From Blastocladiella emersonii ATCC 22665 (lineage: Eukaryota; Fungi; Blastocladiomycota): 64,000 nt of DNA. How positions within the stretch are numbered: the first letter of the stretch is position 1; the number at the start of each line of letters is the position of its first letter. Both the position numbers and the translations under genes were made by a program. The DNA lies in the NCBI GenBank assembly GCA_025594325.1, contig JANHCV010000010.1, positions 1,488,001 through 1,552,000 on the forward strand. The letters are read 5' to 3'. The notes under the pieces are model-generated. The model did not search any database and was not told the DNA's origin. It saw only the letters and a list, made by a program, of their open reading frames with translations. Below are positions 2,688 to 52,921 of the stretch, one piece after another.

Positions 2688-5600
2688 GCGTGGCCGCCGA
2701 CATCAGTCGGGCCTTTGCTGCTGTTGATTCTGATAGTTTAAATAGCATGTGTCTACTTGATCAGCCTCCCCTTCAGTCGAGACAAACCAGTTGAATGAGT
2801 GTGCTCAAAGGCGAGCTCCGAGTGGCACATCGATCAATCATCGAGCGAGCGATGGACACGGCAATTGGTCATCGGCCGCCATCTCTCATTCGAGTCGCAG
2901 ATGGCACCGCTAATGCTTGAAAATGGCGATGGCGTTGCGCGCAAAGCCTTGAACTCGACCTTACACAACGTCGTCGCGGGCGAGTCCTGCGCATAAGTAT
3001 GGCGTCGCAGCATTCGGACAGCGGGCGTAATGATCGGGCTGCTAAGCTCAGCAAACGCATGTCAGTAAGCTTTGCATACCGTGCGAACCGTACAAGTACT
3101 TTACGCACCGCCCGACCGAAAGCGCGTGGTTACTGCTCACGTGAGTGGCGCGGCGCGTAAAGTCTGGCGGCGCGGTCCCGTCTCGAGCGAGTGGAACTTG
3201 AGGTGCAGGGCCGTCGTAAGAGTGTATCATCTCAAGACAAGGCTCGAACATTGACTATTTCAATCTAATTGTGCGTGAATCACAATAGAAGCATCAACTT
3301 GGGTATTACCGGTAGCCGCGTCGAGCGGGCGTGATCAAAGCGGGTCGGGCCCATCGTTGAGCCTGTTCAGCGGACGGTCGGGCGGCGCCTGGAACGGCGC
3401 GGCAGAACTGGAATCCACGTCCTCGAGAACGTTGCGCAGGGCAGGTCATAGAGCTCCTCGTCAACTAGCTGTTCCCTTATCACGCTGGTTCCACACGTCG
3501 CGACACGAGCTCACAGGCGGAGACACTCGAGGCCATGTACTGACTGAGTGCTGAGCTTGAGCTGCTGCTGCGTCTACGCCGAGCGGCGTGCAGTGGGTGA
3601 GCGCGAGGCCAAGGTTACGAAGAAGCAAGAGACCACCGGCCGTCATCATTCAAATAAGTTGGCTGGCATCTGCCCTTGAAGCGACGCAACAAGTCGCTGC
3701 GACTGAAGCTGTGCGTGAGGAGGATTCATGGCGGCGGACGAGATTTGGGAGCGAAGTCACGAATCAGACGCCAGAATCGATGGCCTACTAATGTTGACGT
3801 CGGTTACCAGTCGATGCCATGTAGATCGAGAGCAACTGGTGTGCATCCAGCAGCAGCCCAGCACCAGCGTCACGGTCAGGGCCAGCAAGCTTGCACAGCT
3901 TACACACCGAGGTCGGCTGATACACCACTTCACGCATAATCCTCGCCTGATCCTAGCGCTCGCTCGGTTTCCGGCAGGCCTTGCGCCGAGCGTAGCACTC
4001 CGCGTCAGATCGGCCGCAAGGGAGCCAAGTCCGGGCCGGCAGGTGGTCGCCTAGCCCACAGGACAAGAATGCATCGAGTCCCCCATGACATGATACATGG
4101 CCTAGTTCGCGACAGAGTCTCAAGAGAACGGCAGCGACCATCACGGGCCGTCAGATGGCAAAAGCGGTCGCGTTGCGCCACCTGTTGCGCCACTTCTCGC
4201 CGCTCCCCGTTCATCGCCCCACGCTGCGCCCCCGCTCTCCCCCGACCCTCGCGATACGCAATGAATAGCTTGGCGAGATCATGTACAACTTGCAGCAACT
4301 GTTCAGTTAAGCTGCCGTCGGGACGGACTAGTCGTCGCGCGTGCTGAGCCTGGTGAGGCGCGCGCGTCGGTTGGTCATATTTACCTGATCTTCTTGGTCA
4401 AAATGGATCGTTGAGCTGTCTTCACCTCTTTCCTGAGACTTGCTGACGCGGCACGGTGGACTCAGTACCGCGTGATGTTCCTCGAAGCGGCACGTTCAAT
4501 TAGACTCTTCACTCGGACCTGCTTGGCTCTACCCGCACCCGTTGGATCGAGTATTTCATGAAACCTCCGAGACTTCTTGCCGTGCTGTCTCGTTCTACTT
4601 GAGCCATTGAATCGGGTTCCTGCCCATCAGCGAGACGCGCTGCGTCCACGGCGCCGGCCACGCGCAACGCCACTCCGTCAGAACTCTCACGCCGCCGCGC
4701 ATCCCGTCCGCGCTCCGTTGAACTGACCTCCTCGCGATGCAGCACATGAATAGGACGAGCCCACTTGATGCAATCCCTCGTCCTCGCCCTTTTCCCTCGA
4801 ATTCCATGGACGGCCGCACGTTCGGTCCCAGAACATGTTGCGTGTTGCTCGGCTTCTCAGGCGTAACCCCTGAGAAGCTCGTGGACCTCACGCCGAGCAA
4901 CTCTTCCTTGCACTTTACCCTCGATATTGGCCTCCCCGACGTCCTCTCGACGTCCTCTCGACGGTTTTTCACTGGCGAGGCGCTGTTCGGTGGCCTCGCA
5001 CCACCGGAGCGGCGCTGTGCGACTGTTGAACTAACGTCCAAGCGGCCGTTCTCGATCTCCGGCCAGTGGCGGTAACTTTGGGCAGGCCCGGCCTCACCGT
5101 TCGAGCACTTCCTCATGTCGACCCGAACTAGCCCTCAACGCCGTGCGTGACGGCTCAGCCTTGCGCCGAGCCGCATCACCGGGGTTTTTTGAGCAAGACT
5201 TGTTATGTAGGGCAGGCTCGTCTCCTGCGAGACCGGCGTTCGTTCCTCTCATCAAACTCGCGGATCGACGGCACCGGCGTGCTGGCTGCACGTGTGGCGG
5301 TCTCCCTGCTTGCGAAAAAAAAATGTCTCCAAACGCACACGTGATTTTCAGGTGAGCAAAGACGCGTCTCCCACTCTTCTGCGACACATTTTTGCGCGCG
5401 CTTCGGAGCGCGAGAGCGTTCCGCCGGAAGCGGTGCTCGGGCACCCAGCGAACGAGGCACACTTGGCGCAACGGATCCTTCATAATCGCGGGGCGGGCGC
5501 GTGCAGCGCCGGCCGCGCTCGCCCCGCCTCCCCGGCCCGGCCCGCGTACAAATCGCGCGCCCCGGTCCCGTCCCCGCTCTCTCGCTCTTCAGAACCCCGC

Positions 5601-7231
5601 AAGCCTTCCCTCACTACACTGCTCACTCATCCGCTCCCGCCCCATGCAACCCGATCCCAAGTGTACGACGACGACACTTCTTCTCGCGCATCTGCCGCCT
5701 GTCGCGGTCGCTCCGATCCACATCCCCACCCCATGCAACACACACACCTCGCTGCTCGCCGATCCACTGCACCGCGGGCTGCCGTTGTTGGTAGTAAGGA
5801 GTGTCGCCGACCCGGGGGCGGGCGGCTGACTTCCCCAACCCTTCGCTGAAGAGACGTTTGGTCTCGTCGCAGTCTGCTGGCACCGCTCCGGTCCCGCGTG
5901 CCCTGCGCGCGCGCGAGCAGTGCCATTCGGTGGAGGTGTGTGTGCAGCGCCTCGAGCCGTCCGTGACCAACTGCGCCCGGACTCGTACCCGACTGGGGGT
6001 GTCCGGGTTCTCGCCGTCAGTTGCGGCTCCGCGCATCGACGTGCACGCAGTTTTGTTGCGGGCGGCTGGACCATACGCGACCAGTCTCCGGTGCCTCGGC
6101 CCGCTTCCCCGCCGTGCTCATGATACACGCGCGTAAGCGGTTCGGGACTTGGCGCAAGGACGGTGCGGAGGTCGATGCGGGCGTTTGGTGGGTGGTGGTC
6201 GTCGAGCGACGCGGCGCGTGCGCGGTGCGTGGACAGGGGGGTGTCGTTCGACGTGGTCGCTCGCTTGCCGTGTGGGGTTCCACGGCGAGCGTCTGGGTCG
6301 GGTCATTTTTTTTGGAACAATGCTTGCGTTGCTACTTTATATGTGTCGCCCGGTCGTCTTCTCTCTCTCTCTAACAAGTCTCTCAGAACGGTTCGATCTG
6401 GTCTGGTTCGCGGTCTGGGTCTTCGTGACCATGGCCGCCGTCCCGCCTTGATGGCCATCGCGTGGCCGAGTCGCGCCCTTTCACCGCTCAAGTTCGGCTC
6501 TCCCGACTCTCACTCCCGCACGCTCATGGCCCTCACCACTTCTCAGATGCGACGTGACTCTGCCACGGGTAGAGCTTGGAGGCTCAAGCGCGAGACGCGG
6601 CGCGAGACGCGTTCAAGCATCACCTGACGCTGAGGCGAGGCAGTCCCTCCGCCGTGCTGCCCGCCGCTCCCCTCCTTCTCCTCCGACTCAACTCTCGACT
6701 GGTCTCCTCAACCACACTCACTCCCTGCAATGAAACGCTGCTTGATCGAAGATCGAGGCTGTCGTTGACCGGACGCGGCGGGGCCGGCTTGCGCCCACTC
6801 CGACCTACGACCTGCGCCAAGGTTCGGTGCTCCAACAGCCGCGCTGCTCTCGCCACGAACCATTTCTTCGTCGGTTCCACAAGCTTCCGCGGCACTAGCC
6901 ACTGTTGACCATCGCACTGCCTTGCCGCAACCTGGAGGAGCCCTTGAACATGTCGGCTTTCCGCGCCGCTGCTTGTCCCAAGGTTGCCGTTTGCGTCACG
7001 CAACTGTTACCATGCTCGTCTCGTCCTTCAAGTGCGACGCGTTGTGAAACCTCGCCATGTCACGAGAAGCGACCTGCGCGCCCGCATTGGTCGGTATATG
7101 CGACCTTCCTCGTTTGGCGAGCGATGCGGTGGGGCCGGCTTCTCACACACCGCAAAATCGAGAGCGGGTGTCCCCATCATCGCCGACCTCGTGCGCGCTC
7201 TCTCTCCCCGGACGAGTACTCGCACATCACC

Positions 7232-9113
7232 ATGCAGCAGTCTTGCAAAACTTCTTATGGCTCATCCCGGCGCTTTGCTCTTGCCGCGCTCCTCGCGGCG
7301 CTCATGGTCTTTCTAGCCCACGTCACGCTGCCCGCACACGCTCTCGTCACAACTCCAGCGGTCGTCTACTTTCCGAGTTTGAAGCGTGTGTACATCTTTG
7401 GCGGCGAGAACACGCCCGGCGGCGAGCCGCTAGCCACCGTCGTCTCCTACAATCTCAGCAAGCCTTTCTCCATCGACAAACCACCCGTCACCTCGCTACC
7501 CGCGCTTCCCGTGGCAGCCGCACGACTGATCCCGCTCGTGTACTCGGGTGCAAAGGACGGCGAGTACTTTGTCGAGCTCACGTCGGGCTGGTCCCGCCCG
7601 CCGGGCGTCGCCTCGGCGCCCAACCAGGCCGTTGTGCAGTACAGTGTCCCCGCGAACACGGTGCGCTTGCTCGATGCCAAGACCGACACGGACTATACCG
7701 GGTGTGCGAGGTCGGCCGCGGCGCTTCCCGTGCAGGAGTGGTTTGGGCCGACCATGCCGCCGTCCGAGTCGGACAACGCCATGTACTGTTTTGGCGGCCT
7801 GCTGGGCGTGAACGGGCCGGGCCTCACCACGCTGCGGATCCTCGGCGCCAACGGCAAGCTTCGCGTTCCGACGGACTCCAACGGCGGCCCGTCGGCGCGG
7901 AACGGCGGCGCCATGGTCCGCCTCAACGCGACGACCGCGATGCTGACGGGCGGATGGTCAGGCGGCGCCGAGGCGTGGCTGTTCGATATCGCGACGTCGA
8001 CGTGGTCCAGGTACCCGCACTCGCTCAATATCAGCCGGGCGCGGCACCAAATCATCGTGTACACTTTTCCGGACCAGAAGCGGCGCTATGCCATCAACGT
8101 CGGCGACGGCACGCCGTTCATCGAGTACTTTGAACTCACGAGCTCGGGTCCGGCGACCGTTGGCAAGATTATCAACGCGGGCCAAGGGCCGCTGTCGATT
8201 CGGTCGTTTGCGTCCGTGCTTGCTGGGAGTCAGATCCTCTTCTTTGGCGGAGTCGCGGTACGATCGCTCGGAAACGGAACGAATAAATCCGAACGCTGAC
8301 GACTCTCCCGTGTAGGAACCGAGCGACCAACTTGACCTGCACGTCCTCACCATCGTCCCGAACGACACTGGCCTCGAGTTCCAGTGGTCGCCGACCTTTA
8401 CCCCGCCGACCCCCGCCGAGCACGCTCAGGCGTACGGCTTCGCTGCGACCGCGAACGTGCCTGCGGCCCGATCACCCCAAGTGACCAATTCGGCTGGCCA
8501 CGTACCGGGTGAGCCGACTCTCATTCCACCTGATTCATCGTCGTTTCCAGTCGTTCCGCTCGTCCTCGGCGCCGCGGTGGCCGCGGTCCTCGGCGGTGCG
8601 TTTGTCGTTATCAAGCGGACCCGGGGCGGCCTGGCGTTCAAGCGACTCTCATCTCGCAACGTCTTTGGTCGCGGTAGCGCGAGTCCGTCGTTGCCAGTCG
8701 CTTCGATAGACGCGCCTCACGCGACCGCGTCGCTGGCTCCGCGCGCTGCTCCTCCGCGCGAGTCCTCGGCCGCGATGGTGGCCCGCGACCACTACTCGAA
8801 TCAGCTGGTCGGCGACGACGGCGCGAGCTTGCTTCTCCCTACCGTCCCGCTTGTGCCGCGCGGTACGACCCATGCTGGTCGACGGGACCAGTACGGCCAG
8901 TTCTTCCAGTACCTGCAGCAGATCCAGGCGACGGACGGCACGGTTGGCGAGCCAGCGGGCGACGAGCTTTACCTGCCCGGTTTCCGACCGATCGTGAGCG
9001 CCAACGTCGTCAGTGACAACGACAGCGGCCACGCGAGCGAGATCGGTGAAGAAGAGACATCCGCTGGCGACCGTCTTCAAAGACGCGAGCAGAAGCAGTC
9101 GAGCTTCAAGTGA
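7232..9113 (+). CDS. Type I membrane protein with extracellular Kelch-repeat beta-propeller
   Basis: ATG 7232 followed by a hydrophobic signal (FALAALLAALMVFLAHV). Kelch GG motifs (VYIFGGE, MYCFGGL, MLTGGW..WLFDIATSTW, ILFFGG). Intron 8258-8315 joins in frame to the 8457-9113 ORF, which has a TM helix (LVLGAAVAAVLGGAFVVI) followed by KRTR. Confidence 0.8.
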
Positions 9114-48931: not shown

Positions 48932-51900
48932 ATGACGCGAACCAGAATCCTCCCCCGAGCTCTCGGGGGCATCGGCCCTGCGACCACCGCCGCCGCGCTC
49001 ATACTCGCCGTAACTACCACCCTCGTCGTCTCTTCCACCGTCGCCTTCGCACAACTACAACATGAGCCACGGCAATCCGTCCCGCCACCCTCCTCGTCCT
49101 CTCCACCGTCGTTGCCCTTCACCGGGTGCGCAGCCGCGGGCACCACGGCGCTCCTGTCCGCGCCAGCGGGCACCTTTGGCACCAACTTTTCGCCGCCGGG
49201 GTACCCGAACAATGCGCAGTGCCGGTGGCGGATCGCATCGCTCGACCCGACGCGCGTGGTCCGCGTCACCTTCTCGTCGTTCCAGACCGAGTGCGGCTAC
49301 GACTTCGTCACGGCCTACGACGTGTCAGCCGGTTCCGGCTCGGTGTCGTCGACGCCCATCGCGCGCCTGTGCGGGAACCGCACCGCGCACCTCGCCTACG
49401 ACGTGATCGTGTCGAGCGGGCCCGCGCTCGTCGTCGAGTTTGCCTCGGACGTGGACGTGCAGTCGGCCGGGTTCACGGCGGCCTACCAGCTCGTCTCGCC
49501 GTGCGCTCCCGTCGGGCCCAACGGCGACGTGTGCTCGGGCCGCGGGACCTGCGTTTCCGTCAGTGGCGGCGGCTTGCGTTGCCAGTGCAACCCGACCGCA
49601 TCGGGCACCATGTGCGAGCGCGAGACGGCGGGCTTCGCGGCGTTCGTCCCGCGCGCGAACCTCGCTGCCGCGTACCTCGCCGACGCCGACGCCATGGTCC
49701 TTGCCGGCGGGCAGCGCGACAACCAGGTCCTCCCGTTCGACACGCTGCAGTACAATTTTGGTACGCTCTGTCCTTGCCACTGCCGAGACTTCCAACTTAC
49801 GTCGTCCCTTCCTTAGGCCCAGGATCATGGAGCACCGTCCCGGTAACATTGCCCGGCCCGTCGGACCGCTACTCGCACGGCATGGTCGCCATCAACTCGA
49901 CGGTATACCTGTACGGCGGGATTGGGAACCAGGGCGCGACCACGGACCTTTGGCAGCTGACGCCGGGCTCCGCTTCACCGCAGTGGTCGCGTATCACGCC
50001 GCGGCCGGGACCTCCCGGAAGCGTCGCCGTGACGCCGCCGCCCCTGTACTGGCCGACGGTGGTCGCGGCCGAGGATCTCGGCAAGGTTTTCGTGATTGGC
50101 GGGCTCACGCTGCAGTCGGGGTACTACTCGTACTCGCGGCTCCTGTTCGAGTTTGACACGCGTACGAACTCTATCAAGGTCATCCAGGATGCTCACTAAC
50201 ACTTATCCCGCTCCAACGGAATAGGCACGCTCGTCTGGTCGCAGCGCAACAGCAGCTCGCACCCGATCATCTCGACGTCGGCCGCGGTCGCCGCCTCGGC
50301 CATTTACCGGTCCGCGTCGCGGTTCATCCACGTCTTCACCGAGTACGCGGTGCAGAGCTACCACGTCCCGACCGACACGTGGTTCTTTGACCCCATCGAC
50401 AGCCTGACCTCGCCCACCGATCCGGCCACCGCCATCGACCCGCGCCTGTACCGGTCCGCCACGCTGTTCGGCGACAACTACGCGGTGCTCTTCGGCGGGC
50501 AGATCAAGCCCGTGACGCCGGCCTCGACGGCCCGCGCGTGCTACACGGACGCGCTTCACATCGTGGACCTCGACTGCTGGTCCGTGGTCAACGCGACGTC
50601 GCTGCCGGGGCGACACCGCATGGGCCACGCGGCGGTACGGCGCGGCGACGACGAGCTGGTGATTGCCGGCGGGTTCAACGGCGTGTCGCAGTCGGACGTG
50701 GTCCGCGAGCGGATTGCCCTGCCGCCGGCCAACGCCACAGCGCGCGCCGCGTGCCGCGCGAGGACGTGGTGCGCGCGGTCCAACGACTGCGCCGACTGCG
50801 TGGCCAAGCCCGGGTGCGGGTGGTGCGACAACCAGTGCGTGTACGGGTGCGCGGCCGTGACATCCCCAGGATCGTGCCCGGCGCGCGTCCCGCTGACGCT
50901 CGGCGTGGCCAAGACGGGCCGGATCGCGGGTCTGGCGGCCGTCGAGTTCGGCGCCTTCATCAACGCGCCCGACAACGACCTGTTTATCCGGTTCGACAGC
51001 GACGACGTGGGCAGCGGCGACCCGCCGTTCACGGTCAGCGTGCGGAACCTGCCGCTCAACGCCACGTTCAGCACGCAGTCGACGGCGACCGTGTTTCCGA
51101 GTACCGACGCGCGCCGGTTCGGCGGGTGGCACGTCTTCCGGCTCGAGAACCGGGGGACTGCGGCGCTCCAATTCTCGCTGCTGGTCTCGGCTGAGGGGAT
51201 CTCGTACCGCAACCCGATTGATTACACCGATGCGAACGCGCAGACGGTACGGTGCCTGCCGAAGGGCACACTCCTCATGGATTCTCATCGTCGCGCCCGT
51301 GTGTAGCTCCTCGGCGTCGGGATCATCTGCCTCATGGTCTCGGGCACGCTGGCGATCCGGCGTCTCGCGCGGCGACATCCCGTCAACGCGAACGGCGGCG
51401 CGCTGCCCAAGATCCGGCCGTCCATCTACCAGATCGACGTCAAGGTGCTGACGGACCGCGCGGTGACGATCCCGGTGGCCAAGGCCGTGGCCGCGTCCGC
51501 GAGCAGCGCGCTGTCGACACGGCCGCTACTCGCAAGCCAGATCAAGACGTCGGCGTCGCTGTCGGACACGGACGGCGGCGTCGAGTGGGTTACGCCTGCC
51601 GGCTCAAGTTCGCGCGACGCGGCTATGACCCCGCCGCCAATGCGCGTGGCCACGTCGGGTTCCGTGCCCGTGAGCCCGGCGCGGTCGCTGCACTTTGGGT
51701 CGGGCGAGACCATGTCGATCCCACTGTCGCCGCTGCGCAACGGCGGGAGCGGCGCGCGCGGGAGCGCGGATGTTGGCGGATGGTCGGCGCTGCAGCGGCT
51801 CATCGTACGTCTTCTCTTCCCATGCTCGCGAGCCTGACTGACGCTGAACCCACGCGTAGCCCATGAGCGCCGAAGCCCACATCCTGCCGCCCGAGTCCAG

Positions 51901-52318
51901 ACCCGCTTCACCACCACCACCACCGGGCTCTCCGCCACCACGCCCCACGACACCCTCCCCCTCAACCCCGACCCGCGCCGCGAACGCGCTCGGCACGCGG
52001 TTCCGGTCGCTGTCCCCGACCAAGCGCGCGGCAGCCGCCATGGCCGCGGCAGACGCAGCGCAGGCGCGCGACGTGGTGTTTCTGACGTACCTGGTGACGA
52101 TGCCGGGGTGCCCGCGCGATGCGGTGAGCGGGATCCCGGCGTTCGCGGTGGCCACGGCGGCGGTCCCGCTGTCGCGCGAGGCGGGGGTGCAGCTGCGGCA
52201 GCCGGTCAAGGTCAAGCCGGCCGCGGAGGCGGCGAGGGCGGCGGGGGCGGGAGGGGTGAGGCCGCCGAGTCGTGGGATGGCGGCGGCCGTGGACCGGTTG
52301 CGACGGATGGCAAGATGA
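48932..52318 (+). CDS. Attractin/MEGF8-like type I membrane protein (signal-CUB-EGF-Kelch-PSI-TM-cytoplasmic tail)
   Basis: Signal peptide; CUB (YPNNAQCRWRI, FSSFQTECGYDFV); EGF (CSGRGTC..CQCNP..GTMC); Kelch (RYSHGMV..YLYGG, FGGQI, RMGHAAV..IAGGFNG); PSI (CADCVAKPGCGWCDNQC); TM (LLGVGIICLMVSGTLAI). Introns 49761-49816, 50162-50224, 51247-51306 and 51805-51859 all preserve frame. Confidence 0.88.
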
Positions 52319-52460
52319 GGAGGACGGGGGAGCAGGGAGACAAGACTTGCACGATGACGGGTTAGAGAATAAACATGTTGCTGAACGACAAAGACACAAG
52401 GACATTCCGTGTGATCGAGGCGCTAATCGACCTCGACCACGTACCACGACCGCGGGCCGA

Positions 52461-52921
52461 CTACTTCTCGCGCCACTGGTGCTGGCAGTCGTGGTCGCAG
52501 CATTTATAGAACGTCGACATGGGCTCGTCGGCGGACCGGATCTGGATCTGCAGGAAGTAGGCGCGCGGGTGCTCGCACTTCGGGCACGGGACTACGCGGG
52601 ATGGCGTCAGTGCGGTGCATGCACCCGGAGCGAGGGAGGAGCACGTACCGTCGATCGAGTCGACGTTTTCCCACGCCTTGGCGCCGCCGAGGATATCGTC
52701 GACCTCCTTGCGCTGCATGTACGTCCGGGTGCGCAGCTACGCGGGCGAGTGCAGGGCGCCTCGGTGAGCCGTCGGGGTCCAGCACGGTCCCAGCGCGCAG
52801 CGAGACGCACCTCCTCCGTAATCGGGAAGATATAGGGGCACGTGCGGCAGGCGAACCGCTGCTCGCCGCCGTCCGACTTGAGGGTCAGCATGTTGCCGCA
52901 CTGGGGGCAGAAGATGAGCAT
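52461..52921 (-). CDS. RPC11: RNA polymerase III subunit C11
   Basis: MLIFCPQCGNML..FACRTCPY, KEVDDILGG..AWENVD, CPKCEH..AYFLQIQIRSADEPMSTFYKC. Two introns. Confidence 0.96.

What the first reader, a model, noticed from the sequence alone, without database searches (positions are those of the whole stretch)
48932..52318. Complete attractin/MEGF8-like receptor in an apparent early-diverging fungus, including the conserved cytoplasmic motif
Seen in the sequence: a five-exon gene encoding signal-CUB-EGF-Kelch-PSI-TM, the domain order of animal attractin/MEGF8. When the last intron (51805-51859) is spliced, the ORF at 51863-52318 becomes the tail and contains DVVFLTYLVTMPG..SGIPAFAVATAAV. From memory, the human attractin tail has AAVLSVFVRLP..SGLAVASALV, and the juxtamembrane KIRPSIYQIDV sits where attractin has MASRPFASVNV. 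Established knowledge: attractin/MEGF8 tails recruit the RING ligase MGRN1, and the plant ortholog LOG2 binds GLUTAMINE DUMPER proteins, whose tails carry a VIMAG motif that LVTMPG resembles. Inference: this could be a fungal attractin-MGRN1 surface-protein ubiquitination module retained from the opisthokont ancestor, perhaps linked to flagellated stages.
Basis: partly seen in the sequence, partly recalled or inferred. Interest (0 to 1): 0.75.

Follow-up and report, generated by a model that had tools for sequence, protein, structure and literature searches.

The report
Fungal mini-attractin with a ligase-docking tail
This water-mould-like fungus has a real, complete gene for a small cell-surface protein related to animal attractin/MEGF8; part of its inner tail resembles the part that docks a protein-tagging enzyme in animals, so this system may be older than animals.

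Summary
Window 48932-52318 (+) is a five-exon gene encoding signal peptide, CUB, EGF, attractin-type Kelch propeller, PSI, a beta-sandwich stem, one membrane helix and a 300-residue tail.

No RNA data could be used. The splicing rests on comparison instead: all five exons map in order onto one Catenaria protein, and Blastocladiella britannica has the last intron at the same codon.

The gene belongs to a family found in Blastocladiomycota, Chytridiomycota and Mortierellomycota. Its outer part aligns colinearly with the first repeat of animal MEGF8.

In the tail, the distal block (PMSAE, then VVFLTYLVTMPG, then IPAFAVATAAV) matches the MEGF8 block that binds the MGRN1 ligase. The profile-profile P is 1e-5, or about 1e-3 against unselected MEGF8 sequence. 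AlphaFold predicts three strands there.

The MASRPFA motif itself is absent, with no significant similarity. The VIMAG resemblance and the link to flagella are not supported.

A published tree places MGRN1 in the same fungal lineages. An unchecked scan note reports an MGRN1-type ligase in this genome. The scan also noted attractin-like genes elsewhere in this genome; I confirmed that one of them is a truncated copy.

Verdict: a new, minimal variant of a known family, and a credible but unproven ligase adaptor.

The parts
48932..49760 (+). Exon 1: signal peptide (about residues 1-40), Pro/Ser linker, CUB (residues 77-185, nt 49160-49486), six-Cys EGF (residues 191-228, nt 49502-49615), start of the Kelch propeller
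   Evidence: Pfam CUB 5e-14, EGF_2 0.006. PDB cubilin 3e-20. Hydrophobic N-terminus. Maps to Catenaria P0005 37-228.
49761..49816 (+). Intron 1, 56 nt, GTACGC...TAG, phase 1
   Evidence: The frame changes from exon 1 to exon 2, and the unspliced read hits a stop.
49817..50161 (+). Exon 2: Kelch blades (propeller profile positions 26-124)
   Evidence: PF24981 2.3e-13, 50.5 bits. Maps to P0005 243-336.
50162..50224 (+). Intron 2, 63 nt, GTACGA...CTAAC...TAG, phase 1
50225..50703 (+). Exon 3, first part: remaining Kelch blades (propeller profile positions 135-289)
   Evidence: PF24981 2.5e-19, 70.1 bits.
50752..50880 (+). Exon 3: PSI (plexin-repeat) module
   Evidence: Pfam PSI 0.003, below cut-off. 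Eight invariant Cys/Trp columns in 22 homologs.
50881..51246 (+). Exon 3, last part: membrane-proximal beta-sandwich 'stem' domain
   Evidence: AlphaFold model pLDDT 87. Best PDB neighbours are ColG collagen-binding domain 1NQJ (Z 10.8, rmsd 1.9 over 90 residues) and SIDT1 8JUL (Z 9.8). The cryo-EM preprint names these same two for the MEGF8/ATRN Stem. The sequence profile against the MEGF8 stem is not significant.
51247..51306 (+). Intron 3, 60 nt, GTACGG...TAG, phase 0
51307..51357 (+). Exon 4 start: transmembrane helix (17 residues), followed by basic stop-transfer residues
   Evidence: Kyte-Doolittle 17-residue mean of 2.39. Conserved in the paralog and orthologs.
51415..51450 (+). Juxtamembrane motif RPSIYQIDVKVL. 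This is the fungal-family motif (Pro, then [ML]-Y-x-V-x-L), placed where MEGF8 has the MASRPFA hinge plus first beta-strand
   Evidence: Family alignment A3. No significant similarity to the animal MASRPFA region.
51451..51804 (+). Rest of exon 4: low-complexity Ser/Ala/Pro-rich tail
   Evidence: No Pfam or PDB match. Maps to P0005 up to residue 823.
51805..51859 (+). Intron 4, 55 nt, GTACGT...CTGAC...TAG, phase 0
   Evidence: Same position and phase as the B. britannica intron before PFSVE.
51860..51886 (+). Exon 5 start: predicted strand 1 of the distal tail block (PMSAEAHIL; family consensus PLSxE)
   Evidence: Alignment A1. AlphaFold strand at residues 3-9, pLDDT about 90. Aligns to PITLEP of MEGF8.
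51887..52066 (+). Pro-rich spacer of about 60 residues that relatives lack
   Evidence: Alignment A1 shows it as an insertion specific to this sequence.
52070..52108 (+). Predicted strand 2 plus turn of the distal block (DVVFLTYLVTMPG), containing the one invariant Pro of the family
   Evidence: A1. hhalign to the MEGF8 V-A-T-x-L-L-Q-L-P-G-G segment. AlphaFold strand at residues 70-80, pLDDT 95.
52133..52165 (+). Predicted strand 3 of the distal block (IPAFAVATAAV)
   Evidence: A1. hhalign to MEGF8 C-L-G-S-A-L-V. AlphaFold strand at residues 95-103, pLDDT 97.
52166..52318 (+). C-terminal Ala/Arg-rich end and TGA stop (52316-52318)

Best explanation
This is an expressed-type, complete gene of Blastocladiella emersonii for a minimal member of the attractin/MEGF8 superfamily. 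It has one CUB-EGF-Kelch propeller-PSI unit, a beta-sandwich stem, one membrane helix and a cytoplasmic tail.

Shown:
- The gene structure, by comparison with orthologs.
- The domain order.
- Colinear homology of the outer part with MEGF8 repeat 1.
- A fungal family covering Blastocladiomycota, Chytridiomycota and Mortierellomycota.
- Two conserved tail elements in that family.
- Moderate but consistent profile similarity of the distal element to the MEGF8 block that forms a three-stranded sheet clasped by MGRN1.

Inferred: the protein sits in the plasma membrane. Its outer part recognises an unknown ligand or partner. Its distal tail block, disordered on its own, folds together with the fungal MGRN1-type RING ligase. 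This holds the ligase under the membrane so that it ubiquitinates neighbouring membrane proteins, as MEGF8 and ATRN do in animals and GDU1-LOG2 does in plants. The juxtamembrane Pro-hinge plus hydrophobic strand would stand in for MASRPFA plus the first strand, but that correspondence is only positional.
For: Gene model:
- Uniform GTACG...TAG introns and GC3 bias.
- Exon-by-exon colinear mapping on Catenaria P0005.
- Conserved intron position in B. britannica.

Domains:
- Pfam CUB and PF24981; PDB CUB matches.

Outer-part homology:
- The ortholog P0005 scores PF24981 at 154.6 bits over the full profile.
- It aligns with animal MEGF8 over CUB through PSI in order, whereas other Kelch proteins match only single blades.

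Stem:
- The confident model has 1NQJ and SIDT1 as nearest neighbours. The MEGF8 cryo-EM preprint names the same pair for the MEGF8/ATRN Stem.

Tail:
- 23-sequence fungal alignment.
- hhalign against nine holozoan MEGF8 tails gives probability 81%, P 1.2e-5 and 44 colinear columns.
- The score of 26.3 compares with a shuffled mean of 8.6, sd 1.8, max 15.4.
- Against the whole MEGF8 tail, or its last 700 residues, the best hit is again this block (P 8e-4 and 1.7e-3).
- The MEGF8 profile's best local match falls in the block in 16 of 22 fungal proteins that gave any hit.
- AlphaFold predicts exactly three strands at the three sub-motifs, with pLDDT 90-97. The preprint describes a three-stranded sheet in the MEGF8 tail.
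- By my numbering, the mutation-sensitive mouse residues T2702 and L2717 lie in PITLEP and in LLLQLPGG. These are the columns aligned to the fungal PLSxE and YLxxxPG.

Partner:
- Kong et al.'s tree lists MGRN1 in Allomyces, Catenaria, Batrachochytrium, Spizellomyces, Mortierella and Basidiobolus, and none of six checked names of other fungi, including Saccharomyces, Aspergillus, Cryptococcus and Mucor.
- That is the same distribution as the family found here.
- An unchecked scan note reports an MGRN1/LOG2-type ligase in this genome.
Against: - No RNA evidence was available.
- No canonical MASRPFA exists in any of the 108 hits.
- The juxtamembrane profiles are not similar.
- The fungal tail profile does not find MEGF8 in the PDB sequence set at E up to 10, and profile-to-sequence scores are at most 3.4 bits.
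- The stem profiles are not significantly similar (P 0.059).
- The protein lacks the laminin-type EGF and C-type lectin modules of ATRN/MEGF8.
- It has only about seven basic residues where MEGF8 has a 35 Angstrom cytoplasmic helix.
- A single exon 3 search did not reach animal ATRN or MEGF8, only one choanoflagellate MEGF8-like protein at 1.9e-5.
- The ligase gene of this genome was not seen by me, and no binding was modelled or measured.
Confidence: 0.6

Rival explanations
1. The protein is a true attractin/MEGF8 relative in its outer part, but its tail no longer binds, or never bound, an MGRN1-type ligase. On this view the conserved tail blocks serve another partner, for example endocytic sorting, a kinase or a different ligase.
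For: MASRPFA is absent. Its deletion abolishes MGRN1 association in mouse and fly. The juxtamembrane region shows no profile similarity. The cytoplasmic helix spacer, which is needed for MEGF8 function, is nearly missing here.
Against: The cryo-EM work shows MASRPFA is a hinge, not the recognition site, and that the distal sheet binds the engager. That distal sheet is the part conserved here. The MGRN1 distribution in fungi matches that of the family.
Confidence: 0.2
2. The resemblance is convergent or mosaic. On this view a fungal CUB-Kelch-PSI surface protein assembled independently from common extracellular modules, and the tail similarity comes from composition and strand-like patterns in short segments.
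For: CUB, EGF, Kelch and PSI are all mobile modules. Tail similarity is weak at the profile-to-sequence level. hhalign probability falls to 15-24% when the template is not pre-cut. I chose the blocks by eye.
Against: The colinear alignment runs over about 560 residues across four modules in the same order. The stem has the same rare fold neighbours. In unselected comparisons the best hit still lands on the same tail block. Column shuffles never approach the score.
Confidence: 0.12
3. The gene model is wrong: exon 5 is a separate or untranslated ORF, and the protein ends shortly after 51804 (read-through stops at 51835-51837).
For: There is no RNA evidence. Exon 5 begins two codons before an ATG and could be called alone.
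Against: Catenaria and B. britannica carry the same tail block in the same polypeptide. The intron position is conserved. The splice recreates the family motif I-P-[LM]-S-x-E. GC3 favours the frame.
Confidence: 0.05

Closest known systems
MEGF8 (animals and choanoflagellates), the membrane subunit of the MEGF8-MOSMO-MGRN1 ubiquitin ligase
   Same: - Order CUB-EGF-Kelch propeller (PF24981)-PSI, colinear with MEGF8 repeat 1.
- A beta-sandwich stem next to the membrane with the same PDB neighbours.
- A single membrane helix.
- A distal tail block of three strands aligned to the MGRN1 engager-binding block.
   Different: - One repeat instead of two, about 1050 residues instead of about 2800.
- No laminin-type EGF modules.
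- No MASRPFA.
- Almost no cytoplasmic single helix.
- A Pro-rich spacer of about 60 residues inside the block.
- No evidence for a MOSMO-like partner.
Attractin (ATRN), ATRNL1 and Drosophila Distracted
   Same: A single CUB-EGF-Kelch-PSI unit followed by stem, membrane helix and a tail that recruits MGRN1. The 'more economical' ATRN stem is the closer analogue according to the preprint.
   Different: ATRN has a C-type lectin and laminin EGF modules and a fully conserved MASRPF. No ATRN sequence could be retrieved here, so the comparison is by literature only.
GDU1-LOG2 of land plants
   Same: The same logic: a single-pass membrane protein whose short cytoplasmic motif recruits an MGRN1-family RING ligase.
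   Different: GDU1 has no comparable outer domain. Kong et al. compare its VIMAG motif with MASRPFA, not with the distal block.
LZTR1 and other Kelch propeller proteins
   Same: They share the propeller type (Pfam PF24981).
   Different: They are cytosolic BTB proteins without CUB, PSI, stem, membrane helix or this tail. Generic Kelch proteins match only blade by blade.

Membership tests
Attractin/MEGF8 family | CUB-EGF-six-bladed Kelch propeller-PSI in this order | tested here: met
   Pfam hits exon by exon. The ortholog P0005 scores PF24981 at 154.6 bits. Colinear alignments to animal MEGF8 repeat 1.
Attractin/MEGF8 family | Laminin-type EGF modules (PF24973) and, in ATRN, a C-type lectin between PSI and stem | tested here: not met
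   No such Pfam hit in any exon at E up to 1. PSI is followed directly by the stem.
Attractin/MEGF8 family | Membrane-proximal beta-sandwich Stem domain | tested here: inconclusive
   The model (pLDDT 87) has 1NQJ (Z 10.8) and SIDT1 8JUL (Z 9.8) as nearest neighbours, the same as reported for the MEGF8/ATRN Stem. The MEGF8 chain itself did not appear in the structure searches, and hhalign of stem profiles gave P 0.059.
Attractin/MEGF8 family | Single membrane helix continuing as a long cytoplasmic single alpha-helix | tested here: not met
   One membrane helix is present, but only about seven basic residues follow before Pro/Gly. Chytrid relatives have about 17 helix-like residues, and Mortierellomycota have a long acidic-basic stretch.
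Attractin/MEGF8 family | MASRPF(A) motif after the helix | tested here: not met
   No MASRPF-like string in the window protein or in any of the 108 hits. Juxtamembrane hhalign gave P 0.058 and 0.62. The resemblance is positional only.
Attractin/MEGF8 family | Distal tail block forming the three-stranded sheet bound by the MGRN1 engager | tested here: met
   hhalign probability 81%, P 1.2e-5, 44 columns. Shuffle control 0 of 200. Unselected templates hit the same block at P about 1e-3. Three strands are predicted at pLDDT 90-97. Support is moderate: the profile-to-sequence search failed.
Attractin/MEGF8 family | Physical recruitment of MGRN1/RNF157 | not testable with these tools
   No ligase sequence could be obtained by reference, and no complex prediction tool was available.
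Attractin/MEGF8 family | MGRN1-family ligase encoded in the same genome | not tested
   There is only an unchecked scan note (s1-276915) and the published tree with Allomyces and Catenaria MGRN1.
GDU-type LOG2 adaptors (VIMAG motif) | Conserved VIMAG motif in a short tail after a single membrane helix | tested here: not met
No GDU sequence was compared directly.

The most novel reading that the evidence does not exclude
The receptor-type ligase built from an attractin-like adaptor and MGRN1 predates the split of fungi and animals. Its ancient docking element would be the three-strand distal tail block, not MASRPFA. Zoosporic fungi and Mortierellomycota would then keep a one-repeat minimal version, lost together with MGRN1 in Dikarya. 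That gives a genetically simple system in which to find the original substrates and ligands of this pathway.
Probability: 0.5. Interest if true: 0.75.

Novelty: new variant of a known kind. Interest (0 to 1): 0.62.

Why it matters
[quoted passage not shown] A fungal family with the same outer layout, stem and ligase-binding tail block would move the origin of this adaptor-ligase pair back to the common ancestor of fungi and animals. This family occurs in the fungal lineages for which that paper's own tree shows MGRN1.

It would also support the recent structural view that the distal tail sheet, not MASRPFA, is the recognition element. And it would offer a protein of about 1050 residues in transformable chytrids as a minimal model.

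GenBank already labels a few of these fungal proteins 'MEGF8' automatically. I found no paper discussing them.

Tried and rejected
- The joined protein was never built, searched or folded.
- Exon 4 and exon 5 alone: no Pfam family and no meaningful PDB match.
- ESM Atlas with exon 3: no usable hit.
- Word search with exon 3: only short or partial proteins because of the length window. It was still useful for the paralogs and B. britannica.
- Word search with the choanoflagellate tail: only itself, so that search was wasted.
- Fungal tail profile against PDB sequences: no MEGF8 hit.
- Juxtamembrane profile comparisons, including the Mortierellomycota KPMYRVVV motif that looks like RPFAKVTV by eye: not significant. 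I rejected this as evidence.
- Stem profile comparison: not significant.
- Foldseek and VIA searches did not return the MEGF8 chain itself. It may not be in that structure copy.
- No attractin proper (about 1400 residues) was retrieved, so ATRN versus MEGF8 affinity and a rooted phylogeny were not attempted.
- No second copy of the gene exists inside the window.
Full report
**1. What is in the sequence**

Window 48932-52318 on the + strand reads as a five-exon gene.
- The exons are 48932-49760, 49817-50161, 50225-51246, 51307-51804 and 51860-52318.
- The four introns are 56, 63, 60 and 55 nt. Each begins GTACG and ends TAG, and two carry CTAAC or CTGAC branch-like sites.
- Third-codon-position G+C is 0.84-0.94 in the proposed frame of every exon. 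For exon 5 it is 0.84, against 0.73 and 0.70 in the other frames.

**2. Domains**

- Pfam finds CUB in exon 1 (5e-14) and weak EGF (0.006).
- The Attractin/LZTR1-type propeller PF24981 is split over exon 2 (50.5 bits) and exon 3 (70.1 bits), with a weak PSI (0.003).
- The CUB matches cubilin, PCPE and neuropilin in the PDB, down to 3e-20.
- The N-terminus is a plausible signal peptide, and exon 4 opens with a 17-residue hydrophobic helix followed by basic residues.
- Nothing in Pfam or the PDB matches exons 4 and 5. Pfam also has no model for the MEGF8 stem, membrane helix or tail.

**3. Is the last exon part of the gene?**

Three comparative results say yes.
- The five exon translations map in order onto one annotated protein of Catenaria anguillulae (P0005, 973 residues): 37-228, 243-336, 341-670, 672-823 and 821-905.
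- A partial B. britannica gene model (P0004) carries the propeller end, PSI, stem, membrane helix and a tail with the same motifs in one polypeptide. Its only intron lies immediately before the Pro codon of PFSVE. That is the same place and phase as window intron 4 before PMSAE.
- The splice recreates a motif (I-P-[LM]-S-x-E) that is conserved across the family.

**4. The family**

The exhaustive search with exon 3 found only 108 proteins at E up to 1e-3. The named ones carrying the tail motifs fall into three fungal groups:
- Blastocladiomycota: Catenaria, Allomyces, Sorochytrium, Paraphysoderma, B. britannica.
- Chytridiomycota: Cladochytrium, Nowakowskiella, Phlyctochytrium, Gorgonomyces, Gonapodya, Batrachochytrium, Chytriomyces, Kappamyces and others.
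- Mortierellomycota.

One choanoflagellate MEGF8-like protein (Savillea, P0077) was hit at 1.9e-5. Most entries are 'hypothetical' or 'CUB domain-containing'. A few Mortierellomycota and Kappamyces entries carry the automatic name 'MEGF8'.

The organism is B. emersonii. This follows from paralogs at 79-83% identity in strain ATCC 22665 and from an earlier scan note.

**5. Relation of the outer part to MEGF8**

Full-length fungal members align with animal MEGF8 (retrieved) colinearly from CUB to PSI.
- Nowakowskiella 171-744 aligns with Branchiostoma MEGF8 49-601.
- Catenaria reaches E about 1e-40 at a nominal database of one million sequences.
- Bacterial and other Kelch proteins match only blade by blade.
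- The window's own exons 1 and 3 hit the matching parts of MEGF8 repeat 1; exon 2 gives only a weak match there.
- Both MEGF8 repeats score similarly, so I cannot say which is closer.

**6. The stem**

An AlphaFold model of PSI plus stem, built on a 22-sequence alignment, has pLDDT 87. Its stem is a beta-sandwich.
- Its best PDB neighbours are the ColG collagen-binding domain (1NQJ, Z 10.8, rmsd 1.9 over 90 residues) and the SIDT1/2 outer domain (8JUL, Z 9.8).
- The MEGF8-MOSMO-MGRN1 cryo-EM preprint names exactly these two as the neighbours of the MEGF8 and attractin Stem domain.
- This agreement is indirect. The MEGF8 chain did not appear in the structure searches, and the stem sequence profiles are not significantly similar (P 0.059).

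**7. The tail**

The fungal family has two conserved tail elements.

The first lies 20-45 residues after the membrane helix and longer in Mortierellomycota. It is a Pro-containing hinge followed by [ML]-Y-x-V-x-L (window: RPSIYQIDVKVL).

The second is a distal block with consensus PLSxE, a short spacer, hydrophobic-YL-xx-PG, a spacer, then LP-xx-IAT. In the window it reads PMSAEAHIL, DVVFLTYLVTMPG and IPAFAVATAAV, with an extra Pro-rich spacer of about 60 residues.

Evidence on the distal block:
- Against the matching block of nine holozoan MEGF8 tails, hhalign gives probability 81%, P 1.2e-5 and 44 colinear columns.
- The score of 26.3 compares with 8.6 +/- 1.8 (max 15.4) for 200 column shuffles, and with 8.4 for the reversed block.
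- Because I cut the blocks by eye, I repeated the test against the whole MEGF8 tail and against its last 700 residues. The best hit was again this block, with P 8e-4 and 1.7e-3 and probability 15-24%.
- Profile-to-sequence scores are negligible. Even so, the MEGF8 profile's best local match falls inside the block in 16 of the 22 fungal proteins that gave any hit.
- AlphaFold on exon 5 with the fungal alignment predicts exactly three strands, one at each sub-motif, with pLDDT 90-97.
[quoted passage not shown] It reports that T2702R and L2717R abolish function.
- Using Ser2627 of MASRPFA and the PDB construct alignment, I place T2702 in PITLEP and L2717 in LLLQLPGG. These are the columns that align with the fungal PLSxE and YLxxxPG. 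This numbering is my inference.

**8. What is not conserved**

- No family member has MASRPF.
- The juxtamembrane profiles of chytrids plus blastoclads (P 0.058) and of Mortierellomycota (P 0.62) do not resemble the animal one. The KPMYRVVV to RPFAKVTV likeness seen by eye does not survive this test.
- The preprint shows MASRPFA is a flexible hinge rather than the recognition site. Its absence therefore weakens membership more than mechanism.
- The window protein also has almost no cytoplasmic helix spacer, and it lacks laminin EGF and lectin modules.

**9. The ligase**

I could not obtain any MGRN1 sequence by reference.
- Kong et al.'s tree file lists MGRN1 in Allomyces, Catenaria, Batrachochytrium, Spizellomyces, Mortierella and Basidiobolus.
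- It holds none of the six other fungal genera I searched for: Saccharomyces, Aspergillus, Cryptococcus, Rhizophagus, Mucor or Rozella.
- That distribution matches the family found here.
- An unchecked scan note reports a myristoylated MGRN1/LOG2-type ligase elsewhere in this genome.
- The same paper states that MEGF8/ATRN-like proteins are restricted to animals, choanoflagellates and filastereans.
- I found no paper on fungal members.

**10. Verdict**

The MASRPFA correspondence, the VIMAG resemblance and the flagellar link are not supported.

The most likely function is a membrane adaptor for the fungal MGRN1 ligase (confidence about 0.6). This is inferred, not shown.

The scan has also noted attractin-like genes elsewhere in this genome. 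I confirmed that one of them, about 50 kb downstream, is a truncated 83% copy.

Noticed in passing
L002:10500-12860 (GenBank JANHCV010000014.1, about 1146650-1149010; gene H9P43_009491): A truncated paralog, 83% identical in DNA to window 49632-51580. It keeps a stretch of the promoter/5' region, the propeller, PSI, most of the stem, the membrane helix and the juxtamembrane motif. It lacks the CUB-EGF part and the whole distal tail, and it has a frame break in the stem.
   Followed up: yes
P0003 (H9P43_009452, same 1.25 Mb contig, outside the window): A 211-residue annotated protein that joins one Kelch blade to the stem at 79% identity. It looks like a second decayed or mis-modelled copy of the gene.
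   Followed up: partly
L001:4390-7695 (B. britannica MU625033.1): The ortholog is annotated as two separate genes: CUB-EGF at 4390-5130, and propeller end to tail at 6001-7695. tblastn finds the missing propeller exons between them at 5373-5705 and 5797-6825. The public model is probably split wrongly.
   Followed up: partly
window 52461-52921 (-): A convergent neighbour encoding a TFIIS-type zinc-ribbon protein that looks like RNA polymerase III subunit C11. It has two Cys4 ribbons and one short intron. Its stop codon lies about 140 nt from the stop codon of the attractin-like gene.
   Followed up: no
P0022 (Gorgonomyces, 1470 aa) and P0109 (Entomortierella, 2769 aa): After a complete tail, these models continue into a second CUB-EGF-Kelch unit. 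The likely cause is tandem paralogs fused by annotation, which would make tandem duplication of this family common in fungi.
   Followed up: no
P0027-P0071 (Mortierellomycota members): These members have a long acidic-basic stretch after the membrane helix, resembling the single alpha-helix spacer of MEGF8. It is followed by KPMYRVVVGVQ and, far downstream, QPISIEP and LIVFPGD blocks separated by more than 100 residues of low complexity.
   Followed up: partly
window 52368-52373: An AATAAA consensus lies 50 nt after the stop codon. It may be a poly(A) signal, but this is a consensus match only.
   Followed up: no
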